Of a stretch of DNA of 64,000 bases, positions 965-61,867 are shown one piece after another. The position numbers and the translations under genes were made by a program. The DNA lies in contig RDEW01000042.1 of assembly GCA_011109175.1 (NCBI GenBank), positions 130,504 to 194,503 of the forward strand, given 5' to 3'. How positions within the stretch are numbered: the stretch's first letter is position 1; each line of letters opens with the position of its first letter. Below the pieces are notes generated by a model. That model was not told where the DNA came from. It did no database searches and worked only from the letters and a program-made list of their open reading frames with translations. Origin of the DNA: Dicyema japonicum (Eukaryota > Animalia > Dicyemida).

Positions 965-2537
965 CTACGAATACCTCTCCACAATCATCGCATGTCCCTG
1001 CAGGTCCTTTACTCACAAAACCTGCCCTCCAGCCGCACAAGCAGACACCAATGCTAATCTTCCCTTCTCATCAATCAGTCTATTGGCCGCGTGGGTCACC
1101 AGTCGAACTCCCGTAGCACCGAATGGGTGACCAATCGACAGAGAGCCTCCCCACAGGTTCAGCTTCTCCATAGGGACCTCTCCCACCTTTCCAACTCCAT
1201 GAGCCCTTCCACAGAAGTAATCCGAGTCCATCGCCTTCATATTCGCCAGCAGTTGTCCCTAACAAAAATAACCTAAAAGAATCACAGCAAATGCTTCGTG
1301 GATCTCAAATACGTCGAAATCCGACAGTTTCTTCCCACAAGAGGACAGAAGTCGGGGATACAGTAAGCCGGACTGAAATCATGATAAACACAACCCCATC
1401 AAGAGCTCGTCCTTCGGGTCCTGGGCATAGAAGTTGTACTGTCTCAAATAAGCCTTGGGCTTCAATCCGAGGCTCAGAGCCTTCTCTTCCGACATCAGCA
1501 AACAGGCAGAGGCTCCGTCTGTGAGGAAGGACGAATTTGCAGGCGTGATTGTTCCGTGGGGCTTCACAAACGACGGTTTCAACTTTGCCATGCTCTCAAT
1601 TGAAGAAGGACGAACTCCATTGTCACACGTGGTCACTTTTTTGCTCCCTTATGAAAATTCATTCCAAAATCAACCCGCTGGCTGAAACACGTGCACGTCA
1701 GTCAATTTTCCGTCAGTCTGAGCCTTTGCTGCCAAGGAATGTGACCGATTGGCAAAGGAATCCTAAGCACGTGACAAAATGCCTGGCCTACCTGTTCTTG
1801 TCTGGAAACTGAGAATGCTGAAGCCAACCGATCAGCAGAGTGTCCCATCGTCTCTCCACTTGAGAATTCAGTCACAGCCGGTAACTGGGAGTCCAATTGA
1901 ATACGGTACCTCAGGATTCAGAATCTGGAGGGGGTTAAGGAGCTTCAAGGCCATGAGGTTTCTAACAAACTTGTTTTTGACCTTTGACATAGCCAGCATG
2001 TGCTTTCTGAGAGTCCTGTTGTACCTAATGGGTACATCCGACATAATGTCGACACCCCCGGCAATGCCACAGTCGTAGACACCAGCCTTGATAAGTTCCA
2101 TGAGGCTGACGATGCTCTGGTTGGAAGAAATGCAAGCCATGGAGACTGTGTGGGCTGGAATTGAATTGGAGAGGCCTGAAGTCAGTAAAACCTTAAAATT
2201 AGGCGGTAAGTATTTTTACCTCCCGGGCGATGTTGTGGGTCCTCGGTTCTTGTATGACGGTCCCAATGCACATATACTGAACAAAATCTGAAATATAGCA
2301 AAAAGGTGTTACCCTTATTAATCCCAGTCTTTTTCAAAAGGTTAGTTACAGCCGCTTTTTGCAGTTCGTAGGCCATTACATCCTTATAATCTGTCCCAGC
2401 GACACAGAAGGGTGTCCGTGCACTGTCTACGAGTACGACATTTCTCATGTTAGAAACCGACTTGCTGGTTGAAGCATTTCTAGTCACGTATTTTACTAGT
2501 GAGCTTTAATAAATTTATTACATATAGCGAGTCGCAT
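965..2537 (-). CDS. HADHB: Mitochondrial trifunctional enzyme beta subunit (3-ketoacyl-CoA thiolase), 10 exons, about 446 aa, one 1-nt frameshift
   Basis: Spliced translation [35 protein letters not shown]...[11 protein letters not shown]...[10 protein letters not shown]...DNGVRP...[11 protein letters not shown]...EIHEAFA GQ...[18 protein letters not shown]...[16 protein letters not shown]. Introns at 2496-2521, 2288-2312, 2192-2219, 1885-1909, 1763-1791, 1648-1674, 1373-1394, 1259-1285, 998-1021. One base is missing in the GGGG run at 1354-1357. The first exon and start codon are inferred. Confidence 0.93.
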
Positions 2538-2689
2538 ACAAGGGTTAATATTTAAGTTTTTTTTAAATAAAAAAATATTATAATAAATGAAATTATTTCA
2601 TTATTTAAATTGTTTTTTTAATTTATAACATTTTAGACCAGCTCGGTAGTTTAGTTAACCAATATTCATATAATATTGGTGGATGAGAG

Positions 2690-4040
2690 GACACCCGGAA
2701 ATGACGAATTCACTCAAAATTACCTAAAAGCCCTAATAAAATACTACGCGAAAATCTCTAAAAAACCACATGAGGACTGACCCACCTAAACCGCCGCTAA
2801 GAAACTTATTCACTAAAAGGAGGTAATGGCATCCCTAAGCCAAACAAAAGTAACACATTCTCATGGTCCAGACGGAATTCCCATAATCCTCCTGAAAAAC
2901 CTAGGCAATGAGGGAATCGGTACTTTGATCAAAATCTACAGCTGGTCGATTAATTATAACTCAATCCCAACGATATGGAAACTTGCAAACATTCTCCCAG
3001 TATTGAAGCCAGGAAAACCGAAAGAAGACCCAGCTTCCTTCAGGCCTATTTCTCTCTTATGCTCCATGTCAAAAATTTTGGAAATGCTTATCCTCGCACA
3101 AATCACTGAAAGGACTTCCGATAAACCGTTCCAGCATGGTTTCAAAAAGGATCGGTCAACAACGAGCTTCCTCACATCCCTGACTAACTTTATTCGCTCT
3201 AGATTTCTGTGCAAGCCAAGACATTAAAAAACTGTGTTATGCTCACTGGACGTCCACAAAGCTTTCGACTCTGTGCCGAGGAAGAACCAAACATGGAAAA
3301 TTTACCAATCAGATATTCCTGAAAACCTCAAACACTGGCTGATGAACTTCCTTACCGAACGAAGAGGTAGAGTGGCATGGTAAACATTCATTCTGTCTCC
3401 CATTTATTCCCAAAGGGAGTACCCCAGGGCTCGCCGCTATCACCATTACTATTCAACTTGTTTACGGCTGACATTCCGACGCCGAATGGAGAAGACGACC
3501 TGCTTCTGGCTTATGCAGACGATATCGTCTTAGCCTTACGGGATCAGAACACCCAAACAGCGACGGAAAGAATACAACACATATGGATCGACTACTCGAG
3601 TGGTTTAATGAAAATCGGATGTCAATCAATACCGAAAAATCTGTTACAACTCTCTATACCTCAGATCAAAAGATTGTCAAACTGCGGAGGGAAGAGAATC
3701 GCCGTTCAGCAAATGGCAAAAAATATTGGGTTTGACTTTCGATACGCACATAAACTTTACGAGACACGTCACTAACGTGCTGAACAAATGTGAGAAGAAA
3801 ATCAACCTTCTGAAATGCTAACAGGTCTATGGAAAATTGGACATCACCCTATACTTAAAACGCTCTACTCACAGTACATCGAACCATGCATTTCATATGC
3901 GTGTACTTCACTGGCTTCTTATACGAACATCCAGAAAATCTCCGCAACTCAGAAAAGGACCTTCAAACTAACCGAGAGATGGTATAAAGGGGAAAACATT
4001 AAATTACCGACGCCCATGGAGAAACTAATCGAAAAAAAAC
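2690..4040 (+). mobile_element. Degenerate Jockey/I-group LINE, RT region
   Basis: Frameshifted motifs GPDGIP, WKLANILPVLKPGKP...SFRPISLLC, QHGFKK, LDVHKAFDSVP, GVPQGSPLSPLLFNLF, YADD. Confidence 0.85.
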
Positions 4041-5792
4041 AAAAATGGACTCCAATGCCAAAAAGGAAGTGCTCGCCCGCAACGAACTTGTGCTGGCTCA
4101 AGGGATCAACACCGAGCAAAGACACACAAAGACATCATCCTTATCGAGAACACTACGGAATCTCAAAAAGAATCCCATACAACATACACCAGGAATTAAT
4201 CCTGACACACTTATGAAATTTTATGTCAGTTAAGCCACAAACCATATTTGAAACTGAATCATCAACCGAAACACAAGAAAAAATATCCATACATAGAATA
4301 TTTCAAACTACTGGAGGTATTTCATGCAATTAAATACATGAAAAATACAAAATCCAAAGAGGCGGATGACATTTCAATAACTGAATTGAAACACTTGGGG
4401 CCAATAGCAATCGATGCCCTTACTGAGATTTTCAATTACTCAGTGAATAGAAATGAGATTTCCTCATTATGGAAAAAATCACTCATACATCCAATACCTA
4501 AAAATAACAAAGCCTTATACGACCCCCGGAGTTATCGTCCAATATCGATTCTTTGTGGCCTTTCAAGAACATTGGAATAATTAATCCTCCACAAGATTAC
4601 TCATTCGCTTGATCTTGCAAGTTTCCAACATGGCTTCAGATCGAGATACTCAACTTCAACACATCTAACAAAACTAACTCAGTTCATCTCGGATGGACTG
4701 AACTACTCAAACCACACAAAAGAACGGTACGATTTCGATATCGAGGAGGCGTTTGATTTGGTACCGAGGAAGACTCTAACAACAAAAATTTTTGACACCG
4801 ATGTCCATCCGAAAATCCAGATATGGCTGGCCAATTTTATTAATGGTATAAGAGGCCAAGTTGTCATGAATAATAGAAAATCAAAATAACGATACCTCCT
4901 TAACGGAGTCCCTCAAGGATCCCCTTTATCACCAACCTTGTTCAATTTATTTACAAGAGACCTTCCAAATCCAAACATCCAAAATACCATCCTTCAGTCT
5001 TTATGCCGACGATCTCATTGTCGCAGCAGACACCAAGACCACAAAGAACTTGTGCGAAGGGTTCAGGAGACCCTAGACATTATGAACCCATGGTTCCTCA
5101 AAAACTACATGAAAATATTTCCTGGGGAGTCGAGCACTGCGATTATCTCCTCCTACAAGAAACAAACATCCTTCGATCCCAAATTAACTTAGAATGGAGA
5201 GCTTATCCCAGTTAATAAGAACCCATCAATCCTTGGAGTTATATATGACTCGTTGATGACGTTCACACATCATGTGGACACAATAATTTCAAGAGTTCAA
5301 AAAAAGATGAAATCCTAAAGACCTTTGCTAGATCTCCAATATCTTCACTTTCTCATCTCAAATTATTACACAAACAGTATATTCTACCGACAATGGAACA
5401 TGCATGTACGGCGTGGATTACACCATTGTCAATGCAGAACAAATTAGAGGTCATACAAAACCAATGCCTCAGGCTCCTTCTTAAATGTGACAGAATGACG
5501 CCTACGTCAGAAATGAGGAACACATTTGATCTCAAAAAAGTTATGGAACATCTCGGCGACGAACAACAAAAATTCTTGAAAATGGTGCGATCTTCTGGTT
5601 TCCCTTGAAGATGAGTTTCTTTCCTACCAGAAGTATGCTCGCAAATTTGAGATCAAACCTTCCCCCTTTTGAAAGATCATAAAAGATTGCAGACAAAGTC
5701 GAAACAAAAAAGGACGCACTGACATCCGGATCACTTAATTAGACGTAACTTTTTCCTCTTTCCTGTGTTCCCGGGGTTATAATAATATTATT
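4040..5792 (+). mobile_element. Second degenerate Jockey/I-group LINE (RT plus 3' end), in tandem with the first
   Basis: YRPISILC, QHGFRS, GVPQGSPLSPTLFNLF, broken YADD, C-terminal EHACTAWITPLS...QNQCLR; ends in a GGATCAC stem-loop and TAA-rich tail at 5726-5792. Confidence 0.85.
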
Positions 5793-12014: not shown

Positions 12015-13899
12015 CTAATTATATTGTCTAACAACAGTTCTGGCATGGAAATATTTCTTAGTATCCTCATTCAGTCTATCAGAAAAGGAGATCTTCGTCC
12101 ACCCAACAACTACCTTATATGGAGTAGGATTCTTCAGTCGAAGATGATCCGGTCTAATATGGGTTAACTCATCACAGACACGACTCCTGATCTCCTCAAT
12201 AGTAGGAAGAGGGACCACAATCTAAAATCACAGCAAAGGGCTACATTTCCTTTACTAAAGTACAGCCTCTGCAATGACTAACCGTAGTGGGGATCACGAT
12301 CATCCGCTTATATGACTGAACCTACTAAATACTGAAAGATACATCAGTCGAGTGGTTGCACATTATTTTGGTTCCTGGAGTTGGGGGATCTTCACCAAAC
12401 TCGCAGAGATAGTCCACCATGGCAAAATCTAGTCAATAAATCGACATCCTACTGTTGGTCCCATATATTCTGTAGACCGACTTGCGGTAGGGGAACACAG
12501 CCTTCGTCTCCGGATGGAAGACTTTACTGCATGGAGATCCCTCAATCTCCACCAACTTGTATACACAACCCATATTCTGCCAGTTTGAACTCCCAACCAG
12601 TCCAGAACCGATCCCGAACCCATCAATCTCCGAAGGCTGAGATAAAGACACCCCTAAACCTGGATTAGGAGACTCTGAATGATCTCAGCGGACAGTTGGT
12701 TGCTCACAATTATACGAATCCTCCCAAACCAGTCAAGGTTGAAACTACAATAACCTCTTCTAATACCGGTCCCTGACTTTCTGCATCATCAACCGAATCT
12801 GCTTGGACTGATATGCCAGGTCTCCGCTGTCGATTCGAACTCCTAAAGCTCTATGTCCCTGTTTATTCAATGCCAAGGCCACTGCGGCGAAGTTGACGAA
12901 CCCACTCCTACTGAGTGACCCCACAATCTCACTTCATAGTGTCGTATGTGTCCAACAAGGCCACGAAAGAGTCTGGAAAAGAGTTTGCGTAGCAGATAAA
13001 GCTTACGAGTTCCCCACGGTTGGGGGAGCAGTCTTTCTCGTCTGTAAACTCAGAATTGAATACTCACTAAAGATCTCCTTTAACTGAACAATGAAGTCAT
13101 CGCAGTCCGCAAGGTTGATGATCCCTGGGAGATCTAAGAGTTTTATAAAAAACACGATTAATCTCCCCCACGGAAAATGAGGTGATGAAGGAATGGGAGA
13201 TGGTCCCACTTATGGGAATTCCATATTTGAATCCTGCCAGCAGATTGCTCGTGTTATCGACTCCTTTTATAATCCAAAACAAAACCGCCAATATAGGAGT
13301 ACTTCGAAGCAGTCAAGGCCGTTTGGATCCCAGGGGCCCTTCTGAGGCAAAAATCAGACAGTATCTTATCAGGCCCAACCAGAAGACGATAACGGGAAGC
13401 GTTGGTGACCACAAGACTAACTTATTCGACCAACAACCTGCTGTAGTCGACACAGTTAATGAGGACCGACTCTATAAGCTGTCCGACGCAGTACGGAGCC
13501 CTCACGGTGATCAACGGAATGTACGGAAACACAACGGTCCCCTCATCTATCGCCCAAACTTCGCTTCCTCACAACTGAAGGATCTGAGATAATCAAGGAA
13601 GTCTTCTTCTACAAAATCTGGCAACACTGTGTGCCGGATGTACTCGATCTCTTAAAATCAAAAAGATCCCAACCTTCAGGACCGAATTTAAATCCCTGAA
13701 CGAATTTTAGGCATTTTTCCAGACCGGCAAAAATAGCGTAGCCAGAATTGAAAGGGTTTTGTCGGTAATAAAGTTCAAATACGGCCATGGAGTTGTGTCT
13801 CCTCTCCTTCCAAGCACAGTAGATCATATTTATCTGGTATTTGTCTAGAATGACTAAAATTTTAATTACCGGTGCAAATTGACTCACGTGCTCTACCAT
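12015..13899 (-). CDS. NAPRT: Nicotinate phosphoribosyltransferase, at least 13 exons, two 1-nt frameshifts
   Basis: [12 protein letters not shown]...[24 protein letters not shown]...[12 protein letters not shown]...DFCLRRAPG...[22 protein letters not shown]...[18 protein letters not shown]...[13 protein letters not shown]...GFGIGSGLV...GCVYKLVEI...[14 protein letters not shown]. Introns 13651-73, 13417-37, 13264-85, 13134-55, 13042-67, 12908-32, 12745-66, 12637-59, 12429-52, 12322-42, 12222-44, 12093-113. One base is missing near 13560 and one near 12279. The N-terminal exon structure is uncertain. Confidence 0.92.
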
Positions 13900-14935: not shown

Positions 14936-15529
14936 ATGTCGATTGTTCGCTTAAAAAGTTCAGATGGAGAGATATTCAGTGTTCCCTACGAAGTAATCTC
15001 AATGTCAAATATGCTCAAACGAATGTTGGACGGTACACAATCCAATATATTCAAGAACTCGGAATGATGTCTGAGGACGAGGGAGCTCTGCCTCTTCCCA
15101 ACGTGTGTTCCAGCATACTTAGAAGAGTACCTTCATAAAGTCATTAGATTATAAATTGGTGTACCTACCACAAGGATGACCCTCCTCAGACCACCCAGGA
15201 TGGTCCCAACAGGTCCACGAGGACGGACGATATCTCCCCCTATGACCTGGAATTCCTCAAAGTGGACCAATCCACACTGTTTAGGCTTATCCTTGTTACT
15301 TTATGGAATTACTGGATAGGCTGCCAATTACCTGGATATTCAGCCTCTATTAACCACGTGTTACAAGCATACAGCGAACATGATCAAGGGAAAGACCCCT
15401 GAGGAGATTAGGAGACACTTTAATATAAAGAATGACTTTACTCCTGAAGAGGAGGAACAGGTTGGTGAGTGTATTTGTTGGTAGATTAGAATGGAAAATA
15501 AATGGGCTGAATTTGATAGTAGTCTTTGA
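14936..15529 (+). CDS. SKP1: SKP1 (SCF complex adaptor), 5 exons, intact
   Basis: [16 protein letters not shown]...[23 protein letters not shown]...[33 protein letters not shown]...[38 protein letters not shown]. Introns 15033-55, 15127-47, 15295-319, 15461-84. Confidence 0.96.
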
Positions 15530-19800: not shown

Positions 19801-20399
19801 AACCTTAATCTTCTGGGTTATTATGCACGACCATAGAATTATTTAGTGTGTTTTATCCATGGTCTTGGAATAAATTCATTCAATGTAAAGTCATATAATA
19901 AATACAATAAGAAATTCGTCGAAATACAGTCAATAACAAAGAATATTGAATGCCTTTCAGAAAAAATAATTAATTCCAATAGAAAAATATGCATTGCATA
20001 ATTTCTTCATAATTAAAAGCAACATAATTAGGTGATGAATCAAAGATTTACTTTATAAAGGTTTGATAAATCTTGCACTTTCAATAATGAAGAAATATTA
20101 ATATAAACAAATATTATTTTATCTTAAAATATAAAACAATACAAAAGATACAAATCGTTGACCACAAGGATAATGATCACGTTTATATAATAAATTCTAT
20201 TGATGATGGTTAGCCATATTAAAATATAAATTTTAATTAATATAATTAAATATATGTTTATTCATTTGAGTCATTATTGTCGCGAGCCATCCGTGTTACA
20301 CATTCTATCGTGTTACATTTTGACCTTGAAATTTGACAGCAATCAACCTTGATATTAATCCTCTGAAATTAATCCACTTAACACAATTACAATTCATAT

Positions 20400-21143
20400 C
20401 TAATCAACACCGACGAGCCTGTCTTTTAACTGCAAGATGCGAGTGGAGCGGGGCTTGGATCAATGCCCTACCCATTGGAAACGTGGGAACTCACCTAGAC
20501 GATGAAACGGTCCGCACCGGAGTCTCCATCAGACTTGGATTGAAAGTTTGTCAACCCCATGAGTGCCGATGCGGACGGAAGGTCGACTGCTATGGACATC
20601 ATTCCCTTTCTTGTCGATTTCGCTAGACACAAGGCTATAAATGAAGTGGTGAAGCGCGCCCTCGAGTTGGCGGGATATCCATCCATTCTAGAGCCAACGG
20701 GCTTGAGTAGGGATGATGGGAAGCGACCCGATGGAATTACTGTCTTCCCCTTCTATCGGGGCAAATACTTAATTTGGGATGCTGCCTGTACTGACAGTTT
20801 TCCCAGTCGAAACTTTTGAGGTCGGCAATGAAAGCGGAAGAGGTCGCCCGTTTATATGAAAACTCAAAAATAAAGAAATACAGCAGCCTCCTAAACCGTT
20901 TCCATGTACAGCCAGTGGTCGTCGAGACGAGCGGAGTCTTTGGCCCCAAAACGGTCTCTTTCCTTGGAGCACTTGGGTGTCTATTGACCATAGCCTCGAG
21001 GGAGCGTCGGGAAACCGAGTGGCTTTTCCAAAGGATATCTGGCAGTAGTCAGAGCTAACAGCCATTCGATCATATCCGCTGGACTTTAAAACGATTTTAA
21101 TGTTATAAATAAATACTTGTGAATTTAAAAAAAAAAAAAAAAA
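20400..21143 (+). mobile_element. 5'-truncated CRE retrotransposon nested inside the Ginger2-like element
   Basis: [76 protein letters not shown]; A-run at about 21126-21143. Confidence 0.85.
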
Positions 21144-21410: not shown

Positions 21411-22720
21411 TTAACGAATTACTCTAATTAGGGATTTTAGCACTTCTTTTTCTTGTTTAGAATTTTTAATTCTAATTTTGTTTTCCGATATTATTTCCTC
21501 AACCGTAAAGGGTCCTATTGTAACCAAATTTAAAAAACCTTCATAAAATGAATTCAATTTCATTTTTTTATATTTTGGATCGTTATTAAAGTCTTTCGCT
21601 ACTAAGACCGAATCTCCAATTTCCATTGATCCATTATTTAAATTTCGTTTTCTTTTCATTCTCTGATAATACTGTTCATTGTTAATTTCAACATCTAAAA
21701 TAAAAATGTTTTCTATATACCTTCATTTGATTTTATTTCACAGTCATCCTCATTATTCAAACTTGATATTTCTTCCACATTATCCTTATCAATATCTAAA
21801 CATTATAAAGTTTAAAGTCACTTTCATTCCGCATAAATGCATTATATCCTTTAATACGGTGAAATAGGCTAAACGGTGACTTTTTTGTTGCTGAATGAAC
21901 ACTTATATTATAATTATAGACAATTGAATCGAGGCTCGTAGACCATTCGTGATTTCCTTTTACAAATAGTCTTTTTTGTAACCAACGCGTTAACGTTTGG
22001 TTACACCTTTCAATTTGACCCTGTGATTGAGGGTGCCTTGGGCGACTAAACTTCTGTAAAATGTTGAATTCTTGGCATAATGAAGTAACTATTCCATTCT
22101 TGAATTCTTTACCGTTGTCTGATTGTAATATTTGAGGAGGTCCAAAATTATAAAAAAATGTTTTTTAAAATAGAAGAAATTAGGAATGCTTCCTTCGAAT
22201 TAGTAGCTCGGGCAAAGCAAAACTTGGAATAAACGTCAATTACGTTAAAAATATATTTGAGACCATGATTCTCTTCAGACCAGCGACTCAAATCTACCAT
22301 ATCCATCTGGTAGCGCTCTCTTGGAGCTTTTGCTTTAATGTTTATTAGAGAAATATGTGCTTTTAACGGCTGACTTTGAGCACAGGCCACACATTCAGCC
22401 CAAACTTTTTAGATAATTGATCTCTTAATACTAAAAAAATAATTGTCAGAGTATTCTTTCATTTTGTTTACTCAATAATGGGTTTTCAAATGCAAATTCA
22501 GACATTCAGACTTCATAGTTTCCAAATCATCTTGAGCAATTACATTTTTTGTTCCATCATTAGTTATTAGCCTCGAGTCTTCTAGTAAAAAACATTTTGT
22601 CCTATTTAGAAATCTTGACTTCTTCATTTTAGTTAAACTTCCATCAATCGTATTGTTTTACAAATAAGAAACAATGTTTTGGTACTCTTCAATAGTTATT
22701 ACTAAATTTTTAGGCAGCAT
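21411..22720 (-). pseudogene. Broken integrase-type transposase of the Ginger2-like element
   Basis: HLKTH...CVAC zinc finger; RYQMDMVDL, VIDVYSKF, ILQSDNGKEF, RPRHPQSQGQIE (DDE triad); HSATKKSPF; GPF-type C-terminal motif; in-frame stops and frameshifts present. Confidence 0.85.
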
Positions 22721-22984: not shown

Positions 22985-24935
22985 TTTCAAGATTTCGAGT
23001 GACATTCGGTCATATAACCGCTTAGATCTTGTTGAGGAATTTGTTAGTCAATACTTACCTGGATGTTCTGACGAAATGTCATTGAAGCGACAATCGTAAT
23101 CTCAGAAGGAATGTGAATATTAATTATTTGCAATAAACTGAGTGAGTGTAGATAGATGTGTAGTAGTCGAGTGGAAAAAAACGAATCAGAAAAAAAGGCT
23201 TCTACATCGGGACGAACAAGATTTCTTGTGCATGGATGCGAAGAGGACCACCAATCTGCTACAGCTGTCAGCAAATCGGTCACTCTGCATACCAGTGCAC
23301 GGGAAAGAAAAAATGCTTCCGTTGCGCGGGAGAACACGACACCACCAAGTGCGATACGGATCCGAGTCTTGAACGAAAATGTGTTAACTGCGGGTCAACA
23401 AAACACGGTGCAAGATACGAAGGATGCCCTGTATTCATGGAGGCCAGACGAAAGTTAAATTCCCGAATCGACAACAGGGAACCAAAACAGACGGATATTA
23501 TAACCAAGAAATTGGAACTGCCAGTCCAAAAAAGGGTAATTGGCCCAAAAACTAACAAGTACGAAGCTGCTCCTCTTCCACGAGAGTCGGCCTGGCTACC
23601 GAGGGAAAAGTTATCAGGGAGTATTACAAAAAAAACTAAAGGAAATAATATCAAGACTGAAGGAGCTAAGCGGCATACTCGGGTGATTTACGCAGTATGG
23701 TGGACCTGGCATAGAGAGCCCGGGCCACCAACAAGAAAATTGAAAAGAAACATGAGATAGTGCTGGTGAACGCCCGATCCCTAAAAAAGAGGCGTCATGA
23801 CCTGGCACTACTACTATCGTCCACCAATATTGACATCCTGGTGGTCAACGAGACCAAGGTAAAAAAGACCAACACCACAATGCTACAGGGACACAACTCT
23901 ATAGAAATTCCATGGGTCGAAGGTGCAGAAGCTGGTACTGGAACCACATTGTTCTACAGTGAAGTTCTACAAATACGAATACACACTGTGAATTTGTTTC
24001 CGTCGAGGTGAGATGCTGTGGTCGTTAGATGCACGTCGGTGGAATGTATTCAAAGGATTTTAGAAAATGCTCAAAAAATTGAAGAATTCTTCACAAGAAA
24101 CGATATGTCTATCTTAGTGGGTGATCTAAATGCCAAGAACATTAAATATGGGTGCCTCGGAACTAACGAGGATGGAGTCAGATTAAGAAAATTGAGTGAT
24201 AAGACTGGCTTTGAGATTTTGACATCGGAAAATCCGAATCATTACTCGCACTACGGGAGAGAAATGCTTGGGGTGTTCCTAGTGTCATCACTGCTCTACA
24301 CTTATGTAGAGAAGACGATGATCATGTGGGACATCGGAGCGACCACATACCTCAAGAGATGTTATTGAACCTAGCTCCAGTCTGCATGGAATCTGTGTTT
24401 ACAGGTTACGACCTAACAAGAGTAAACTGGGAACACTACAGAAGGTACATATCAAGAAACCTCAAAGACTGGAAAGATAAGATTATTCCCGAAGTGAAAT
24501 CGAGATCATAGACAATGAACTCTCCATCATGATGGAGACATACTTACTGCTTTACGCAAAGAGGAGATCCTCAAGTACCAACCATGGAAAGAGCATCAGT
24601 CTTTCCCGTTCCACATTATCTTTGATCAATGAAAGGAATCGCCTGAGGACCAAACTCAGAAAATGTGTGGACTGGGTAGACCTGATTGCATTGACCGGAC
24701 AACTGAAGATAATCATGACAGCCATTGAAGAGGGAACAAGACTGTCTCAATAACAATGTTTGAGGGTAGAGGCAAGCAAACTAAACACCAAAGACCCCTC
24801 GTTCTGGAAGTTCTACAAAAGAATAACTGACCAGAAAAGGAATGACATAAAAATCACCTTGACCAAGCCAGAAAGTGGACTGTGTTCTATGGAAGAAACA
24901 CAAGATATCTTTTACTAGCAACTAGACCGCATTCA
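22985..24935 (+). mobile_element. 5' half of a Jockey/I-group LINE: gag-like ORF1 plus APE endonuclease
   Basis: Three zinc knuckles (CYSCQQIGHSAYQC, CFRCAGEHDTTKC, CVNCGSTKHGARYEGC); APE motifs LVNARSL, VVNETK, LVGDLNAK, SDHIP; cut off by a CRE copy at about 24940. Confidence 0.88.
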
Positions 24936-24939
24936 GGAA

Positions 24940-28680: not shown

Positions 28681-28688
28681 GATCTAAA

Positions 28689-43849: not shown

Positions 43850-45230
43850 GTTATAGTGCCACATAAATAAATACAACAATGAGCTTTAATAAGTTTATAG
43901 ATTTAGAAGTATCAACGACAAAACAAAGGAGAGTAGAGGCCGTCAGCTGATCCTGACCTCCTTGAGCAGTCGCCTTATTTTTTTCGGTGTTCATCCCAAT
44001 GCCGAAGTACTTCCGGTGAGGACGAGTGACTTTTTGGATGTTTTGCAGAGCTCCCGTATTCCTCACGAGTTCCTCGAACTGGGTTGGTTTTAGGAACCAT
44101 CTCTTGTATTATCCAAGTAGCGTTTTTACAAAGTTTAATTTTCGCTAAGAAGAGGAGATTATGTTGCTCACATATTTGCTGAAGGTAATTAGTAGGTTAT
44201 ATGTGACCCCCAGTATTTTGGTTGAATTTGTGGAGGGGATTGTTACCCTATTCAGGGTCAATGAAGTCGCTGAGTTAGTCAATTTTCTATTGGAAGTAAA
44301 GATCGTAGAGCACTACGATCTTTCATGATTTGTGAGTTGGTTCCTCGTAAGCCAACAGTTCAGGTCATCCAGTGAATCTTGTAAGCGGGTATCCGCTGTG
44401 TGGATGCTCTAGTCTCTTGTTCCCAAGATTAAGTCGTAGGCCGTAAACAAGGAATCGGGTATCGTCGTAACCGTAAAAAGGCCTGTCGCTCATGAATAGG
44501 TCGAAGAATGGGAAAGGTGATCCTTGCAGGACCCCGTTCAGCAGAAATTTAGTGACTGATGATGTGGAATGGGAAATTACTCTTTTTCTAACGTCCATGA
44601 GGAAATTAGCGAGCCAAATTTTCAGGTTGTTTGGAATGTTAAAGCCATAAATCTTCCTAGTGAGGAGTTACATCGGTATCGAGTCAAAAGCTTTCTGCAT
44701 GTCAATGGAACACATAATGGTCTTTTGATGCCGAGGTGTGCGTTGAAGGCCTTCCTTGATGAATTTTGTCAAGCAAGCAAGATGGGTAGTTGTGAAACGA
44801 GCCTTCTTGAAGCCATGTTGGAAGGATACGTCTGTGAGGTAAGGTTTAATCCGATCGAGAACGAGTTTTTCTAGGATTTTGGAGGTCGCACACAGGAGGG
44901 ATATTGGTCTCTACGGAGCTGGTGAGTCCTCGGCAGTCTGAGTTTTAAGATAGGTCGAATATGGGATAATTTCCATAGAGTAGTTATCAGGTTCCTACTG
45001 ATGAAGAGGTTGTAAATTCAGTCGAGGCCAAGATGGTATAGGGCCTATCTTCTTGAGTACAATAGAGGGAATTCCATCTGGACCACTTGCGTCAGACGAT
45101 TTATGTTTTTGAATAGCCTTCCGCACAACGTCCATTGAAAGGTTGTTTAAAGTTGCGTCCCGTATTGGTTTTATTGAAAATGTGGAAGGATTCTTCAATT
45201 TCTGGTGTGGAACAAACAAAATAATCAGAA
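43850..45230 (-). mobile_element. Degenerate LINE RT region
   Basis: KSSDASGPDGIP, YRPISLLC, QHGFKK, GVLQGSPF, YGYDD. Confidence 0.75.
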
Positions 45231-45989
45231 AACTTTAACGAATTAGCCACGTAGCACCACATGGGCCACACGGCGGTTAATTAAATTAATTGACTGTCTC
45301 TTGGAGGGAGTTTAACTTTATTAGGTTAATGTGGGACATAAGGTTATTCCAGTCTCTTTCCTGTTTCATCTTAGCATAAACCTCATATTAAAAAAAATTA
45401 AAAAAAATATATTTTAGTTATATTAATTGGAATAAAATATAAATTTTCTAATAAAAAATTCCGGAGGGAGTAATGGAGGATATCTGATCAAACATCAGGA
45501 GAAAACCCGACACAACCGAGCCTGTGTGGGATCGAGAGAAGAGCATCGGGCCAAGCTGAGAGTTTTTATTAAATTTGTTGGGATCACTTAGTTTATTTTT
45601 TGTTGCAACGGTGGTCTTGGAATAAAGATTTGATTATTTATTCACGTGGGTCGTAGTAATAATTACCAAAAATGTCAGTTAATGACTCAATTCAATTTAG
45701 AATTATCAGTAAATTCATCCCAGCTATCAACTGAGTGATTATACAATAAACCAGAATTACGTCATTTTTGAGGACGACATTTCAGTCCAGATTTCAGCGA
45801 AAGAAGATGGAATACCCAACGTCTCGTCATTCATGAGCACAAGATCTCCCACATTCTTATCTTTCGGTTGGTGACGTCCTTCTTCAAACTGTACTTTGTT
45901 GATTTAATTAAGAAATTAAACCACAAGAAGACTTTCTATCGACCCCTTCATAAAATCCATAAGAAATTGACCCTGTTAACCCATCCTAG

Positions 45990-48075: not shown

Positions 48076-49279
48076 ATGAGCCTTAAGTTAATAGTGGAAG
48101 ATTCAATAGGAACTTTGGAATCCAATAAGTGTCTAGATCCGGCGACAGAGGCTAAGAAACTGAACAATGCCATGAAGGGTTGTGGTAGTCATCAAAGTGA
48201 GAGTTAGGTACTGATGAGGAAGGCATCATTGATTTTATGAAGTTGACATCTGCTCAGAAAGTAATAGTCTCGAAAGAGTATAAAAAAATGTTTAACAAAG
48301 TATGTCTTAGTTTTAAGCCCAGGAATTGAGGGCTCACATTCACAGTGAGCTAAGTGGAGATTTCCGGGATCTCGCGGACTCTTTAATGAAGTCCAGATGT
48401 GAGCGTGCTTATGATGCAATTATCTCCGCCACCAAAGTTGGGCTGATGTGACCTATATTTAGAATTTAGGCACGAATGAGCTTTTACTAGCTACAGTTTT
48501 GATTAGCAGAACTAATAATGAAATGAAAAAGATCGTCGAAATGTACAATGAAAGTAGATTCAATGAAAATTTGGTAGAACACAAGAAATCTTTGGTGGAT
48601 CTTATAAAAAGAGAGACAAGTGGATTCCTACAAACTTTCCTTGTCCACTTGATTGAGGTTTTTATAATTTCTATGTGATTAGAACGGAAGGAAAGAACTA
48701 ACCGGTGAGCAATATGAGCAATATGTTTACACAAATATGATTGACTGTTTACTCGACCTTGATTTGGCGACTCAACAAGCAAAGAAAATGTCCGACCTAT
48801 TTTCTTCTAATAAAGAATTTGTGGACACAGAGATCTTACTCAGAATTTTTGGTGAAAATAGATTCCAACTGAGCTTATTCCTCCAAGAATTTTTACGTGT
48901 ATGACTTTTGATTCATCTAAAAGATCACCGGTAAGAATTTTATTGACGAAGGAAATCATCTGTTTGATGAAGACGGCCAATTAGCGAAAAATTTGCCTGG
49001 TATTGGTTTTCTTGCTAATCTAAGCAATGTGGGCCATCTATCCTTCTGGGTTTTTTAGTCATATCCTGCAAAAAGCGTGTAAAGGATATGGAACTAATGA
49101 AAATCTGATAAACTTCATACTACCGATACCTCTGAGGTTTTAATAATTCTGTATTTTAGTTCAATCTGTTAAACATAATGAATAAATTTAAAAAAGATAC
49201 GAAAAGAGATCTGATAGATCTCCTAAGAAGCGAAACATCTGGTGACTACTTCAAGCTGATAGAAAAAATACTAACTTAA
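48076..49279 (+). CDS. Annexin (four repeats), at least 9 exons, one 1-nt frameshift
   Basis: GTLESNKCLDPATEAKKLNNAMKGCGTDEE...SELSGDF; NLGTNELLLATVLISRTNNEM...RETSGF; KGYGTNE...RSETSGDYFKL. Introns 48185-207, 48300-22, 48437-62, 48554-77, 48658-82, 48899-923, 49000-24, 49137-59. One base is missing between about 49100 and 49125. Subfamily not assignable. Confidence 0.9.
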
Positions 49280-58889: not shown

Positions 58890-60700
58890 TTTTAAATTTT
58901 TTTAATTTTTTATTAAAAAACAATTATTTAACAAAGAAACAAATGTTGATTGAGGAAGCCTGCTACGTGGACCGCGAATAAGTACCCTTAGAATATGGGC
59001 ACTCCAATCTTTTGTCTTAGCCAGAATCCTTCTCGTTGATCCCATTTTTCTAGCAAGCATTTCTCAAAGTTCGCGCAAGAACTTTTCCGTCATTGGACAA
59101 CGGTTCTTGATTAATCGACCGCAACAGGAGTAAATCGGTACCGGTCCAGAAACAAGAATATTTCTTGATTTTTAGGTTTTCCGCAGTTGAAGCAGCTGCT
59201 CCGTGTGTCTGAACTGATTTAAGGAGGTTCGTGCTTGAACACGTGTCAACACAAGTTGCGTCCCAGACCAAAGATCTTCCGGATGTGAAGGGTAAAAAGT
59301 CATCCAGTCAGGTCTCTTTCCATCTCCTGGATCGAGACCCACGGGTTCAAGCTGTGATAAGAAGCCTGTAGCCTTCAGAGCTTAAATGATCACATCGTTC
59401 AGAGCAGCGTGACGTTGTACTTTCGCGGCTCTTCTGTAGGACAGCGGGTGCAATCCCTTTGCATAGACTATTTTCCGCAGCGGCATCGGTGCTTTCGGCA
59501 AACGTCTAGTCTTAGCTTTTGTCCGATTCCAATCCTCAAAGATTCGTCATCCAAAAGAGTCACTAGGTTTGGGCAAGGTATTGCACTAAGCCATGATCCA
59601 CTCCCTCCACTTGAAGCTGACACCAATTAAGCCAGACGATGGTGATTTGCTTCTTTATTAAGGTCTTCCAAAATTTTGGAGCAGACAATGTTATCCAATT
59701 ACTTTGCATTGTTGTGTCTTTGGGGATTTTGAGTCCAGACCCGTTCCATTTCCGACAAACTTTGTCAAATGACTTATTCCAGCGAACTCCAATAGTGTGA
59801 TGAAAATCTTAACGTGTCAAATGGCTGCAGCTTGAGAGAGAGACGATAGATATGCCGGGTACGCAACCTCTAGCACCGATCTTAGATCGACACCCCCAAA
59901 TCCAGAGGAAAGCTTACATTGCTTCCAACCAAGTTCGTCCGTAATTGATTTGACAAAACAGCGTCCAGCTTCCGAGGTGTAAGTAAACGTAAGGTCCTTA
60001 ATATGGCTAGGACGTAACCCTTCCAAGCCTCCACTGCTACTAGCGGCTAAGGAAGCTATTCCACAGCGCACTTGGTTTTAGCTGTGATTATCTCCGGGTT
60101 TCCTTCAGGGTTCAAAAACTATTCAGTCAGTCAGTGCATCTGAGTGCTTCAGTATTAAGGTATTCAGAACCTGTGGGTACAAGACAATACTGTGTCATCG
60201 GACATGATCGCCCTCCAGAAGTTTCCGGTTTACTCTCTTCTTTAGTTTGTTGGGAAAGTCTTTGGTGTATGCTCCTCTGGTTTGGACCTCATTGACATTA
60301 AGTGGCTGTTTAAGTATAGCGTGTATGTTATGACTGATATAATTCATTATCCTTCTCTTCAGTTTCCCAGATAAGTTGAGTCGGGAATTTGTTTCTTTAT
60401 TATTGTCCTCATATTCTGTTGTAGGTATTCCGAGTGTAACAGGTGAAAAGCATATGAGATTTAACCAGGATTCCCAACTGTCAGAAGACAGTGCGTGATC
60501 AATGGCATCTGAAAGACACGATGCTGCAGCAATTCGTACTCCTTTAGGGATTTTACTGGGATCTTTCTGGCATTCCGGAGGTTCGAGATCTTCAAGAGAG
60601 TCTCTTCAGTATACGGCAGTGTAAAATTTGGCTTAGCTATTTTTTCCCGCCTGGGGACCTCATTTCCAAAAAAGTCCCATCAAAATTCATATCTGAGTTT
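58890..60700 (-). mobile_element. Internally deleted, decayed CRE retrotransposon
   Basis: KIPKGVRIAAASCLSDAI, GGLEGLRPSHIKDL, GFGGVDLRSV, VWDATCVDT. Confidence 0.8.
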
Positions 60701-61006
60701 CAGTCTGGAAACAGATTATGCAATTTCAAGGTAATCCCCACGTCAGTACTAATCAGTAAGCAAATCTTCTCTCACAATTAACAAAACGAGGATCATTGGA
60801 AGAATATCGATAACCTTACCGAACCATATTGTATCGCTTATCACGAGAAGAGCTTATTAACACATTTCCCCACAAACCGTGAGGAAAATTCTGATAGCGA
60901 TCCCTTGACTGAAAGGAACCATTAGAGAGTTAACTGTTAGTAAATATTTATTAACACATATTTTGCTAAATATAACCAAAATCTAGTGAAAAGTCAAATA
61001 ACAAAA

Positions 61007-61867
61007 CTAATACTCATCCCCCTCACCATTCTACCAATAATAACTAAATCATACACTATTGCACAATATCCTCTCAATCTCCTTCACACTTAACATATCC
61101 TCTGATGACATTCCCTCAATCGTTACCTCCAAATTATGGAGGACGTTATAGTAGTAGTTCCTCTCCTTATCCACCCGTTCATACTCGACGTACAAGTCAT
61201 CATACTACAAATCACTCAGATCCACAACATCTTTCTTCTTCTGCTCAAACTCCTTTCTCAGAGCCAACAACTCAACAGAGACCGACTCAGTAGGACAGTT
61301 TTGACAGGTTTTACGCTGAGTTTCTGGAATGTCTTACATGTTGTGGAGACTGACCCCACTTGGGATGTCTTTGGGGCAGAATTGGGGAAAATTTTCCTGT
61401 GTCTGGCCTCAGTCTCCATCCGAGTGGACACATCGTAGTTGGCAATGAAGAACTTGTAGAACCACTGAACAAACTCGTAGTTGTCTTGGAATCTCGACTT
61501 GGCCAGCCTCTCTATGGGAATTATCTACCACGTGATCTGGAAACAGTTAACCTTGTCAACTCCAGTTTTGCTAAACATGCTTTGGAGTTCTTTCAGATTC
61601 TGTAAGAATTCGTGTTCCTGGTTGACCGAGGTTTTAATTCTGAAAGGACTAAGAGTTTCTAGAATATTCCATAAGTTTCTACTTGGAAATAAATAGTCCA
61701 TTAGGATGCAATAGTGGAAACCCTTAGACAGATCCTCAACTTTAGTTATTGGATACGGGACAAACTCGTTGATCCAATCAACAACTTGATTACGACTTAT
61801 ATTACTCGTTGAAGAACTTGTGTTTACAACATTTATAGCCTAAGGTGAATTTAAAAGCAACAACCAT
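61007..61867 (-). CDS. MAPRE1: EB1 / microtubule plus-end tracking protein
   Basis: [25 protein letters not shown]...[20 protein letters not shown]...[13 protein letters not shown]...[25 protein letters not shown]...[15 protein letters not shown]...NGEGDEY* (EEY-type tail). Introns 61840-64, 61659-82, 61525-51, 61205-28, 61031-54. The linker junction near 61310-61350 is unresolved. The symbol denotes the family, not a specific paralog. Confidence 0.9.

What the first reader, a model, noticed from the sequence alone, without database searches (positions are those of the whole stretch)
965..61867. Every callable intron is 21-29 nt long (38 of 38)
Hand-splicing five conserved genes required 38 GT-AG introns: HADHB 9 (22-29 nt), NAPRT 12 (21-26), SKP1 4 (21-25), annexin 8 (23-26), EB1 5 (24-27). 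Each restores the frame and conserved motifs. The genes are intron-rich, but the introns are near the lower size limit known for spliceosomes. Known parallels are dicyemid mesozoans, Paramecium and chlorarachniophyte nucleomorphs. If the source is not one of those lineages, this is an independent miniaturised-spliceosome system.
Basis: partly seen in the sequence, partly recalled or inferred. Interest (0 to 1): 0.8.

Follow-up and report, generated by a model that had tools for sequence, protein, structure and literature searches.

The report
Known dicyemid-type micro-introns, 21-29 nt
Five ordinary animal housekeeping genes in this window are each cut by many tiny (21-29 base) GT-AG introns; the pattern is real, but it is the already published hallmark of dicyemid (Dicyema) genomes, which this window most likely comes from.

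Summary
That gives 38 GT-AG introns of 21-29 nt (mean 24.2, median 24). Support comes from collinear Pfam and PDB coordinates across exon pieces, and from profile scoring against nine animal NAPRTs.

Two corrections apply:
- "Each restores the frame" is not quite true. Four single-base frame breaks remain (one in HADHB, two in NAPRT, one at the last annexin donor). No 21-29 nt intron repairs them. They look like one-base deletions in the assembly.
- About seven junctions have alternative GT or AG choices, and the HADHB 5' intron is only a prediction.

The novelty branch fails. The window is animal DNA, about 37% GC, rich in LINE fragments, with public runs dated 2017 and 2019. This matches Dicyema japonicum, though the organism is inferred, not shown. 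Dicyemid micro-introns are published (Ogino 2010; Lu 2019; Zverkov 2019). A second animal case, myxobolid myxozoans, was published in 2026.

Other first-stage notes of this scan flagged the same micro-introns on other pieces of this genome.

Verdict: a real feature, already known, low interest.

The parts
966..2537 (-). HADHB gene (mitochondrial trifunctional enzyme beta subunit, thiolase), 10 exons
   Evidence: Exons map collinearly to Pfam Thiolase_N 1-41, 68-141, 145-173, 174-195, 209-260 and Thiolase_C 29-52, 54-115. The best PDB matches are human trifunctional enzyme beta, 6dv2 and 5zqz.
2496..2521 (-). HADHB intron 1, 26 nt (predicted; joins MRLAI to LKYVTRNAS..., a presequence-like N-terminus)
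   Evidence: Found by open-reading-frame linking only. No homology support, so this is the least certain of the 38.
2288..2312 (-). HADHB intron 2, 25 nt
   Evidence: The only GT-AG solution between the flanking anchors. Pfam positions on either side are collinear.
2192..2219 (-). HADHB intron 3, 28 nt
   Evidence: The only GT-AG solution. The next exon resumes at Thiolase_N position 66-68.
1885..1909 (-). HADHB intron 4, 25 nt
   Evidence: The only GT-AG solution. Thiolase_N runs from 141 to 145 across the junction.
1763..1791 (-). HADHB intron 5, 29 nt
   Evidence: The only GT-AG solution. Thiolase_N 173 and 174 adjoin exactly across the junction.
1648..1674 (-). HADHB intron 6, 27 nt
   Evidence: The only GT-AG solution. 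Collinear with Thiolase_N and with PDB 5zqz_B from residue 272.
1373..1394 (-). HADHB intron 7, 22 nt (a 19-nt alternative exists)
   Evidence: Two solutions. The 22-nt choice gives GPAY, matching GPTY at 5zqz_B residues 354-357.
1259..1285 (-). HADHB intron 8, 27 nt
   Evidence: The only GT-AG solution. Thiolase_C positions 52 and 53/54 adjoin across the junction.
998..1021 (-). HADHB intron 9, 24 nt (a 15-nt alternative exists)
   Evidence: The 24-nt choice gives AAGGQ|GHAMIVE, which I recognise from memory as the conserved thiolase C-terminus.
1349..1354 (-). Frame break 1: the reading frame shifts by one base at a CCCC run, between GPAYCIP and RLLSSCGKK
   Evidence: 5zqz_B residue 353 aligns to the end of exon 7 and residues 359-360 to YP of the next frame. 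Exactly GPAYCI must lie between them. No GT-AG solution exists here.
12015..13899 (-). NAPRT gene (nicotinate phosphoribosyltransferase), 13 exons
   Evidence: Matches Pfam NAPRTase_N and NAPRTase_C and PDB 4yub. Scores 542.5 bits against a profile built from nine animal NAPRTs.
13651..13673 (-). NAPRT intron 1, 23 nt
   Evidence: NAPRTase_N runs from 59 to 61 across the junction. The 32-nt alternative scores 5 bits lower.
13417..13437 (-). NAPRT intron 2, 21 nt
   Evidence: The 18-nt alternative scores 8.8 bits lower.
13264..13285 (-). NAPRT intron 3, 22 nt
   Evidence: The 25-nt alternative scores 8.2 bits lower.
13134..13155 (-). NAPRT intron 4, 22 nt
   Evidence: The only GT-AG solution.
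13042..13067 (-). NAPRT intron 5, 26 nt (a 17-nt alternative is nearly tied)
   Evidence: The 26-nt choice scores 542.5 bits, the 17-nt choice 541.5 and the 35-nt choice 538.0.
12908..12932 (-). NAPRT intron 6, 25 nt (22-nt and 28-nt alternatives exist)
   Evidence: The 25-nt choice scores best. The 22-nt choice is 6.1 bits lower and the 28-nt choice 10.7 bits lower.
12745..12766 (-). NAPRT intron 7, 22 nt
   Evidence: The 10-nt alternative scores 8.8 bits lower.
12637..12659 (-). NAPRT intron 8, 23 nt
   Evidence: The best of four solutions; the others score about 7 bits lower.
12429..12452 (-). NAPRT intron 9, 24 nt
   Evidence: The only GT-AG solution.
12322..12342 (-). NAPRT intron 10, 21 nt
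   Evidence: part of the best-scoring model.
12222..12244 (-). NAPRT intron 11, 23 nt
   Evidence: part of the best-scoring model.
12093..12113 (-). NAPRT intron 12, 21 nt, in frame and free of stop codons
   Evidence: The only in-frame-length GT..AG whose removal raises the profile score, by 3.9 bits. NAPRTase_C ends at position 100 just before it.
13560..13575 (-). Frame break 2: shift between ...SFSCE and [10 protein letters not shown]
   Evidence: NAPRTase_N 61-87 and 87-124 adjoin in two different frames over the same bases. A frame patch scores 542.5 bits, 14/17-nt excisions about 530, and 26/29-nt introns about 522.
12269..12282 (-). Frame break 3: shift between ...IPTTVSH and QRLYFSKGN
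   Evidence: A frame patch scores 542.5 bits, a 14-nt excision 531.1 and a 20-nt excision 529.1.
14936..15529 (+). SKP1 gene, 5 exons
   Evidence: Matches Pfam Skp1_POZ 2-31 and 34-51, and Skp1 1-40. The last exon reads [11 protein letters not shown]....
15033..15055 (+). SKP1 intron 1, 23 nt
   Evidence: The only GT-AG solution. Skp1_POZ runs from 31 to 34 across the junction.
15127..15147 (+). SKP1 intron 2, 21 nt
   Evidence: The only GT-AG solution. Exon-level ORFs from other animal genomes (P0218, P0222) break at this same position.
15295..15319 (+). SKP1 intron 3, 25 nt
   Evidence: The only GT-AG solution. Seven of the nine exon-level ORFs fetched from other genomes run off into an intron right after ...FELIL, at this same position.
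15461..15484 (+). SKP1 intron 4, 24 nt (a 21-nt alternative exists)
   Evidence: The 24-nt choice gives EEEEQ|IRMENKW, continuing the Pfam Skp1 match that ends at position 40 of 48.
48076..49279 (+). Annexin gene, 9 exons
   Evidence: Pfam Annexin matches repeat 2 (13-66) and repeat 4 (2-24 and 32-63). Repeats 1 and 3 are too divergent to score as single exons.
48185..48207 (+). Annexin intron 1, 23 nt (eight GT-AG alternatives of 11-29 nt)
   Evidence: Chosen because it restores the annexin motif KGxGTDE. This is a motif judgement, not a scored result.
48300..48322 (+). Annexin intron 2, 23 nt (a 14-nt alternative exists)
48437..48462 (+). Annexin intron 3, 26 nt
   Evidence: The only GT-AG solution.
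48554..48577 (+). Annexin intron 4, 24 nt, in frame and free of stop codons
   Evidence: The unspliced exon shows 62 residues against 54 profile positions. The split pieces map to Annexin 13-40 and 44-66, adjoining once the intron is removed.
48658..48682 (+). Annexin intron 5, 25 nt
   Evidence: The annexin repeat ends at profile position 66 just before it.
48899..48923 (+). Annexin intron 6, 25 nt
   Evidence: The only GT-AG solution.
49000..49024 (+). Annexin intron 7, 25 nt (a 19-nt alternative exists)
49137..49159 (+). Annexin intron 8, 23 nt as canonical GT-AG. Frame break 4 sits at its donor: the spliced frame is off by one base.
   Evidence: Sequence shown. Annexin 2-24 (plus PIPL) and 32-63 need exactly one residue between PIPL and FNLL. 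That is met by a 22-nt excision, or by one more G in the GG run at the donor.
61049..61867 (-). EB1 (MAPRE) gene, 6 exons
   Evidence: PDB human EB1 (1pa7) residues 2-89 align to the CH-domain exon. The last exon matches the Pfam EB1 C-terminal motif.
61840..61864 (-). EB1 intron 1, 25 nt, directly after the ATG
   Evidence: Splicing gives M|[12 protein letters not shown]... aligns from residue 2 of human EB1. Sequence.
61659..61682 (-). EB1 intron 2, 24 nt, in frame and free of stop codons
   Evidence: The unspliced translation carries exactly 8 extra residues against human EB1, and they correspond to the 24-nt GT..AG at 61682-61659.
61525..61551 (-). EB1 intron 3, 27 nt (a 42-nt alternative exists)
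   Evidence: The 27-nt choice keeps [23 protein letters not shown] recognise [22 protein letters not shown] in human EB1 from memory.
61257..61282 (-). EB1 intron 4, 26 nt (ambiguous: eight solutions of 11-53 nt in a low-complexity linker)
   Evidence: Homology cannot choose among them; two of the eight are 26 nt.
61205..61228 (-). EB1 intron 5, 24 nt (a 21-nt alternative exists)

Best explanation
These are ordinary U2-type GT-AG spliceosomal introns, shrunk to 21-29 nt, in intron-rich housekeeping genes of a dicyemid mesozoan. The source is most likely the published Dicyema japonicum assembly.

Shown here:
- Five animal-type genes are split into 43 exons.
- The translated exon pieces adjoin on family profiles and on solved homologues, although they lie only 21-29 nt apart in the DNA.
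- Every interruption starts with GT and ends with AG.
- 35 of the 38 would break the reading frame or introduce a stop if kept.
- Splice signals are minimal: G|GT[A/T] at the 5' end and [T/A/C]AG at the 3' end. There is no pyrimidine tract beyond general T-richness (T 40%, C 11%).
- A is enriched at fixed distances from the 5' end (+13, +16/17).

Inferred, not shown:
- Removal at the RNA level by a conventional but size-tolerant spliceosome.
- A branch point set by its distance from the 5' splice site.
- The identity of the organism.

The four leftover one-base frame breaks are most likely deletion errors in the assembly, not biology.
For: Gene models and intron list.

Collinearity of exon pieces:
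- Thiolase_N and Thiolase_C
- NAPRTase_N
- Annexin
- Skp1_POZ, Skp1, CH and EB1
- NAPRTase_C
- human EB1 1pa7, with an exact 8-residue surplus at the 24-nt in-frame intron
- human HADHB 5zqz
- human NAPRT 4yub

Profile scoring of NAPRT alternatives: the chosen model scores best at 542.5 bits, and every alternative splice choice scores lower. Of 35 in-frame-length GT..AG stretches inside exons, only one improves the score when removed.

SKP1 introns 2 and 3 lie where exon-level ORFs from other animal genomes also break.

The standard genetic code is in use, with TAG, TAA and TGA all serving as stops.

Organism:
- The best NAPRT relatives are all metazoan.
- GC is 31-42%, about 37% overall.
- Non-LTR retrotransposon pieces are present: RVT_1, Exo_endo_phos_2 and zf-CCHC.
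- Runs of one organism are dated 2019 and 2017.
- Lu et al. 2019 (PMC6736024) report 67.5 Mb, GC 36.7%, 49% repeats with LINE ORF2, contig N50 196 kb and mean intron 38 bp.
- Zverkov et al. 2019 (PMC6543705) report a median intron of 27 bp, two thirds under 30 bp, and cite Ogino 2010.
- Hadjez et al. 2026 (PMC13644364) report that D. japonicum splice signals are reduced to GTa and AG, with weakly conserved A residues whose distance from the AG grows with intron length.
Against: - No transcript evidence was obtained.
- No protein of this organism was found in either protein library or in the contig index.
- The organism name is coded in the run table, so the dicyemid assignment is circumstantial.
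- The sample median of 24 nt is a little below the published dicyemid medians of 26-27.
- Four frame breaks need an extra assumption.
- Annexin repeats 1 and 3 and the EB1 linker give no homology control over the exact splice sites.
Confidence: 0.85

Rival explanations
1. The window comes from a myxobolid myxozoan (parasitic cnidarian). This is the other animal group with introns of median 22-27 bp, so the micro-introns would still be a known kind.
For: Hadjez et al. 2026 report median introns of 22 bp in Thelohanellus kitauei and Myxobolus rasmusseni and 27 bp in Henneguya salminicola, with equally reduced 5' signals. The median here (24) falls in that range.
Against: - H. salminicola has 29% GC and lacks a mitochondrial genome, whereas this window has about 37% GC and an intact mitochondrial beta-oxidation gene.
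- M. honghuensis repeats are mainly LTR and TIR elements, and that genome is described as having large introns. Here the repeats are non-LTR retrotransposon pieces.
- The paper says that only AG marks the 3' site in non-myxobolid myxozoans and in D. japonicum. This implies an added 3' motif in myxobolids, and little of one is seen here.
- Run dates of 2017 and 2019 fit the two D. japonicum studies.
Confidence: 0.06
2. The source is a lineage not yet known to have micro-introns. That would make this an independent miniaturisation of splicing.
Against: - Every measurable property matches the published D. japonicum assembly: GC, LINE load, intron size and signals, long gap-free contigs, and run years.
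- A survey of 51 metazoan genomes found such introns only in myxobolids and D. japonicum.
Confidence: 0.03
3. Some of the 38 are not introns. The three in-frame, stop-free ones (12093-12113, 48554-48577, 61659-61682) could be coding insertions. The 5' HADHB one could be untranscribed. The true count would then be 34-37.
For: - Chance GT..AG pairs of this size are common, about 27 per kb per strand.
- Removing 12113-12093 gains only 3.9 bits.
- The HADHB 5' intron has no homology support.
Against: The surplus is exactly 8 residues against human EB1, and the annexin profile positions adjoin once the 24 nt are removed. Both surpluses correspond exactly to a GT..AG stretch that is 71% A+T.
Confidence: 0.15
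4. The four one-base frame breaks are biological, not assembly errors. They could be non-canonical splice sites (for example a 22-nt GT-TA excision at the annexin donor), 14-17 nt introns, programmed frameshifts, or decaying gene copies.
For: - 14-nt and 17-nt GT-AG excisions exist at both NAPRT breaks.
- A 22-nt excision would fix the annexin junction.
- Another first-stage note reports a non-canonical GT-TG micro-intron elsewhere in this genome (s1-315929).
Against: - The HADHB break has no excision solution at all.
- At both NAPRT breaks the plain frame patch scores 11-21 bits above any excision.
- All four breaks are the same kind of lesion: the assembly is one base short, and each can be placed next to a short run of one base.
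- The genes show no other damage.
- The published assembly merged an Illumina assembly with a Falcon PacBio assembly, and no polishing step is described.
Confidence: 0.12

Closest known systems
Dicyemid spliceosomal micro-introns (Dicyema japonicum, Dicyema sp.; Ogino et al. 2010 Gene 449:70; Lu et al. 2019 PMC6736024; Zverkov et al. 2019 PMC6543705)
   Same: - An animal genome with many introns per gene at positions shared with other animals.
- GT-AG introns, mostly under 30 bp.
- Splice signals reduced to GT[a] and AG.
- GC about 37% and LINE-rich.
   Different: Nothing of substance differs. The sample median here (24 nt, n=38) is slightly below the published medians (26-27 bp). None of the 38 exceeds 29 nt, whereas genome-wide about a third of predicted introns are 30 bp or longer and the mean is 38 bp.
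Myxobolid myxozoan micro-introns (Henneguya salminicola, Thelohanellus kitauei, Myxobolus rasmusseni; Hadjez et al. 2026 PMC13644364)
   Same: - Median intron length 22-27 bp in a parasitic animal.
- A reduced 5' splice signal.
- Weakly conserved A residues whose distance from the AG grows with intron length.
   Different: This is a cnidarian lineage. H. salminicola has 29% GC and no mitochondrial genome. Myxozoan genomes are described as having relatively few transposable elements, and where they are abundant (M. honghuensis) they are mainly LTR and TIR types. The window's GC, LINE load and run dates do not fit.
Paramecium and other ciliate short introns
   Same: GT-AG introns of about 20-35 nt.
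   Different: Ciliates read TAA and TAG as glutamine. Here all three stop codons end genes and none occurs in frame within about 1,700 codons. From my own knowledge, Paramecium is depleted of 3n introns that lack stops. Here 13 of 38 introns are 3n, and three of those are stop-free. The genes and repeats here are of animal type.
Chlorarachniophyte nucleomorph introns (Bigelowiella) and Stentor introns
   Same: Spliceosomal introns at or below this size: 18-21 nt in the nucleomorph (my own knowledge) and 15-16 nt in Stentor.
   Different: Those size ranges are narrower and shorter. Nucleomorphs are gene-dense, very AT-rich and free of retrotransposons, whereas this window is mostly LINE debris with long intergenic stretches.

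Membership tests
U2-type GT-AG spliceosomal introns | GT at the 5' end and AG at the 3' end | tested here: met
   38 of 38.
U2-type GT-AG spliceosomal introns | Removal restores a continuous reading frame that is collinear with homologues | tested here: met
   Pfam and PDB coordinates adjoin across junctions, and profile scoring favours the chosen model. Four extra one-base frame breaks remain outside the introns.
U2-type GT-AG spliceosomal introns | Absence of the segment from mature mRNA | not testable with these tools
No transcript-derived protein of this organism is in the libraries.
U2-type GT-AG spliceosomal introns | Branch-point adenosine and pyrimidine tract | tested here: inconclusive
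   A is enriched at +13 (17 of 38) and at +16/+17 (15 and 16 of 38) from the 5' end. The introns are T-rich (40%) but show no defined tract. With n=38 this is only suggestive.
Dicyemid micro-intron genome | Most introns under 30 bp, median about 26-27 bp, with several introns per gene | tested here: met
   Range 21-29 nt, median 24, and 4-12 introns per gene, or 7-8 per kb of coding sequence, compared.
Dicyemid micro-intron genome | Intron positions shared with other animals (conservative exon/intron structure) | tested here: met
   Tested for SKP1 only. Introns 2 and 3 coincide with exon ends seen in exon-level ORFs of other animal genomes. The other four genes were not tested.
Dicyemid micro-intron genome | Genome properties of D. 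japonicum: GC 36.7%, about half repeats with LINE ORF2, contigs of about 200 kb | tested here: met
   GC is about 37%. RVT_1, endonuclease and zf-CCHC fragments are present. The window is 64 kb without gaps. Compared.
Dicyemid micro-intron genome | Taxonomic identity (Dicyemida) | not testable with these tools
   Organism names are coded, and the window holds no rRNA or other marker.
Myxobolid myxozoan micro-intron genome | Genome properties reported for sequenced myxobolids (GC 29% and no mitochondrial genome in H. salminicola; LTR/TIR-dominated repeats in M. honghuensis) | tested here: not met
   The window has about 37% GC, non-LTR retrotransposons and an intact HADHB. GC and repeat content were not checked for the other myxobolid species.
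Ciliate (Paramecium-type) short introns | Ciliate nuclear genetic code (TAA and TAG as sense codons) | tested here: not met
   HADHB and NAPRT end in TAG, annexin in TAA, and SKP1 and EB1 in TGA. No in-frame stop occurs in the spliced models.
Nucleomorph pygmy introns | 18-21 nt introns in a gene-dense, repeat-free miniature genome | tested here: not met
   Lengths are 21-29 nt. The five genes occupy under 8 kb of the 64 kb, and the rest is retrotransposon debris and AT-rich spacer.

The most novel reading that the evidence does not exclude
The four one-base frame breaks (HADHB 1349-1354, NAPRT 13560-13575 and 12269-12282, annexin donor 49136/49137) are real features of the genome rather than assembly deletions. 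The organism would then correct them at the RNA or translation level, by non-canonical splice-site choice (for example a 22-nt GT-TA excision), by introns of only 14-17 nt, or by programmed +1 frameshifting. That would be a further relaxation of the splicing rules beyond what is described for dicyemids.
Probability: 0.1. Interest if true: 0.55.

Novelty: already known. Interest (0 to 1): 0.15.

Why it matters
It matters little as a discovery. Micro-introns of this size are the textbook oddity of dicyemid genomes and have been described four times (2010, twice in 2019, and 2026).

The check has two practical uses:
- Hand-spliced gene models in this genome can be trusted at the level of intron length and position.
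- The assembly appears to carry roughly one single-base deletion per 1.3 kb of coding sequence in this window. Such errors break automatic gene models, and they could be mistaken for non-canonical introns or frameshifts in other findings from this genome.

Tried and rejected
- **Longest-ORF path search.** A dynamic-programming search for the longest open path through GT-AG introns picked many false introns. Non-coding frames are often open and GT..AG pairs are common. I replaced it with anchor-to-anchor linking and homology checks.
- **RNA evidence.** Both run searches returned runs of unknown kind.
- **Transcript-derived or annotated proteins of the organism.** The word-indexed library found none with the HADHB exon or the SKP1 exon. 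The 1.84-billion representative library, searched with a NAPRT exon, gave a best identity of 70%. An exact look-up of the 406-aa ORF at 62232-63449 found nothing.
- **RNA genes.** Rfam and tRNA scans of the window found nothing, so no snRNA is present here.
- **Divergent annexin exons.** PDB and Pfam searches on annexin exons 1, 2, 3, 5 and 6 gave no annexin match.
- **Other host genes.** Pfam on ten long ORFs outside the five genes found no further host gene that could have shown a long intron.
- **Rejected splice models for the NAPRT breaks.** Introns of 26/29 nt or 14/17 nt at the first break, and of 14/20 nt at the second, score 11-21 bits below a plain frame patch.

Full report
**What the window is.** The window is 64 kb of gap-free eukaryotic nuclear DNA. 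GC is 31-42% in 4-kb windows, about 37% overall. It holds no Rfam family and no tRNA. Outside five conserved genes, the long open frames are pieces of non-LTR retrotransposons: reverse transcriptase, an endonuclease-reverse-transcriptase domain, and a zinc-knuckle ORF1. There is also an integrase core. Other long frames have no family match.

**Rebuilding the genes.** A naive longest-open-path search through GT-AG introns failed. GT..AG pairs of 21-29 nt occur about 27 times per kb per strand, and wrong frames are often open. I therefore placed short peptide anchors inside each recognisable exon and listed every GT-AG excision that joins neighbouring anchors without a stop. Most junctions have one solution and the rest have two to eight. 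The gap between anchors is itself only 22-30 nt, so there is no room for a long intron.

I then tested each exon separately against Pfam and against solved structures.

**HADHB.** The exons map to Thiolase_N 1-41, 68-141, 145-173, 174-195 and 209-260, and to Thiolase_C 29-52 and 54-115. They are in order and adjoining. The best solved relatives are the human trifunctional enzyme beta subunit. This gives eight internal introns of 25, 28, 25, 29, 27, 22, 27 and 24 nt. A ninth of 26 nt joins a five-codon first exon to a presequence-like N-terminus. That one is a prediction only.

**NAPRT.** Single exons were mostly too divergent for Pfam; only NAPRTase_N and NAPRTase_C scored. I spent the one search of the representative library on a NAPRT exon. 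It returned nine long NAPRTs. The six that carry names come from a fly, a turtle, Ciona, a cobra, a lamprey and a sea cucumber. I built a profile from the nine and scored alternative spliced models.
- The chosen model scores 542.5 bits, and every alternative splice choice at every ambiguous junction scores lower.
- As a control I removed each of 35 GT..AG stretches of in-frame length inside NAPRT exons. Thirty-one removals cost 5-51 bits and three were neutral.
- Only 12113-12093 (21 nt) gained, by 3.9 bits. NAPRTase_C ends at position 100 just before it.

**SKP1.** The exons map to Skp1_POZ 2-31 and 34-51 and to Skp1 1-40, and the last exon reads [11 protein letters not shown]. There are four introns of 23, 21, 25 and 24 nt. 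A search with the exon-3 open frame returned exon-level ORFs from other animal genomes. Many of them run off into an intron directly after ...FELIL, and some begin directly before VI[QT]W. These are the positions of introns 3 and 2 here. At least these two introns therefore sit at positions shared with other animals.

**Annexin.** Repeats 2 and 4 match Pfam Annexin. The exon holding repeat 2 shows 62 residues against 54 profile positions. Splitting it at a 24-nt in-frame GT..AG gives pieces at positions 13-40 and 44-66, which adjoin. With seven frame-changing introns this makes eight, of 23-26 nt. The choice at intron 1 rests on restoring the KGxGTDE motif. Exons of repeats 1 and 3 gave no match of their own.

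**EB1.** The unspliced CH-domain frame aligns to human EB1 residues 2-89 with exactly eight surplus residues. They correspond to a 24-nt GT..AG that is in frame and free of stops. The alignment starts at residue 2, which fits a 25-nt intron directly after the ATG. The other three introns are 27, 26 and 24 nt. The fourth lies in a low-complexity linker and cannot be fixed by homology.

**The set of 38.**
- Lengths are 21-29 nt, with mean 24.2 and median 24.
- Length classes modulo 3 are 13, 13 and 12, so multiples of three are not avoided. Three of the 13 multiples of three are stop-free in frame, so 35 of 38 would break the protein if retained.
- Introns are 65% A+T (T 40%, C 11%), against 56% A+T in exons.
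- Signals are weak. G precedes the intron in 22 of 38, and +3 is A or T in 33 of 38. Position -3 is T, A or C in 37 of 38.
- A peaks at +13 and at +16/17 from the 5' end. This fits the published remark that the distance of the weakly conserved A residues from the AG grows with intron length, but 38 introns are too few to prove it.
- Intron density is 7-8 per kb of coding sequence.

Four places need a one-base frame correction that no 21-29 nt intron supplies.
1. *HADHB, at a CCCC run near 1350.* Human HADHB residue 353 aligns to the end of one exon, and residues 359-360 to the next frame. Exactly GPAYCI must lie between them. It is present, but one base out of register with what follows.
2. 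*NAPRT, near 13567.* NAPRTase_N positions 61-87 and 87-124 are read from overlapping bases in two frames. A frame patch beats 14/17-nt excisions by 12 bits and 26/29-nt introns by 20 bits.
3. *NAPRT, near 12274.* The pattern is the same: the frame patch scores 11-13 bits higher.
4. *The last annexin donor.* The canonical 23-nt GT-AG leaves the frame off by one. The annexin profile needs exactly one residue between PIPL and FNLL.

In all four cases the assembly is one base short, and the missing base can be placed next to a short run of one base. The genes are otherwise intact. The published D. japonicum assembly merged a Platanus Illumina assembly with a Falcon PacBio assembly, and no polishing step is described. 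Deletion errors are therefore the simplest reading.

**Which organism.** No tool names it. The evidence is circumstantial:
- The genes are animal-type and the standard genetic code is used.
- Public runs holding this DNA belong to one organism and date from 2019 (several runs of one sample) and 2017.
- Lu et al. 2019 describe D. japonicum as 67.5 Mb, 36.7% GC and 49% repeats with many LINE ORF2 copies. Contig N50 is 196 kb, with 6.2 introns per gene and a mean intron of 38 bp.
- Zverkov et al. 2019 give a median of 27 bp for Dicyema sp., with two thirds under 30 bp, and cite Ogino et al. 2010 for 40 D. japonicum genes.
- Hadjez et al. 2026 surveyed 51 animal genomes. They found such introns only in myxobolid myxozoans and D. 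japonicum, with splice signals reduced to GTa and AG.

The myxobolids fit less well. H. salminicola has 29% GC and no mitochondrial genome. M. honghuensis repeats are mainly LTR and TIR elements. I put the dicyemid origin at about 0.9.

**Verdict.** Genome-wide, "every intron" does not hold. About a third of predicted dicyemid introns are 30 bp or longer. Also, 21-29 nt is not the lower limit for spliceosomes, since Stentor introns are reported as all 15-16 nt. Other first-stage notes of this scan had already flagged micro-introns on other pieces of this genome. Interest is low. The only loose end with any potential is the set of four frame breaks.

Noticed in passing
window 1349-1354 (-), 13560-13575 (-), 12269-12282 (-), 49135-49138 (+): There are four single-base frame breaks in three otherwise intact housekeeping genes. 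In each, the assembly is one base short, and the missing base can be placed next to a short run of one base. That is about one per 1.3 kb of coding sequence, and they look like uncorrected long-read deletion errors. They would break automatic gene models and could be mistaken for non-canonical introns.
   Followed up: partly
window 12093-12113 (-), 48554-48577 (+), 61659-61682 (-): Three micro-introns are a multiple of three long and free of stops in frame, so retaining them would only insert 7-8 residues. Overall 13 of 38 introns are multiples of three. The avoidance of such introns reported for Paramecium (my own knowledge) is not visible in this small sample.
   Followed up: partly
all 38 introns (list): A is enriched at fixed distances from the 5' splice site: +13 in 17 of 38, and +16/+17 in 15-16 of 38. 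It is not enriched at a fixed distance from the AG. This would fit a branch point measured from the 5' end. The sample is too small for a firm statement.
   Followed up: partly
window 15127-15147 and 15295-15319 (+): SKP1 introns 2 and 3 lie exactly where exon-level ORFs from unrelated animal genomes begin or run into an intron (before VI[QT]W and after ...FELIL). The positions are therefore shared with other animals even though the introns are tiny.
   Followed up: partly
window 21414-22408 (-): An integrase-core (rve) gene lies in three consecutive open frames. The first two overlap by 14 nt in different frames (...SSILKNIF / FFYNFGPPQILQSDNGKEF). This could be a frameshift or decay in a transposable-element copy.
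   Followed up: no
window 2700-5700 (+), 23150-25900 (+), 27000-29100 (-), 44300-45250 (-): There are several degraded copies of non-LTR retrotransposons: a zinc-knuckle ORF1, an endonuclease domain, and reverse transcriptase split over shifted frames. They fill much of the space between the five host genes.
   Followed up: partly
window 62106-63449 (+): The longest open frame in the window (448 codons) has no Pfam match. Similar peptide stretches (for example ...RACLL...GAWLNA[IL]P...) recur at 20330-21055 (+), and the frames at 59053-59627 (-) may be related. It is probably the C-terminal part of a repeated element's protein.
   Followed up: no
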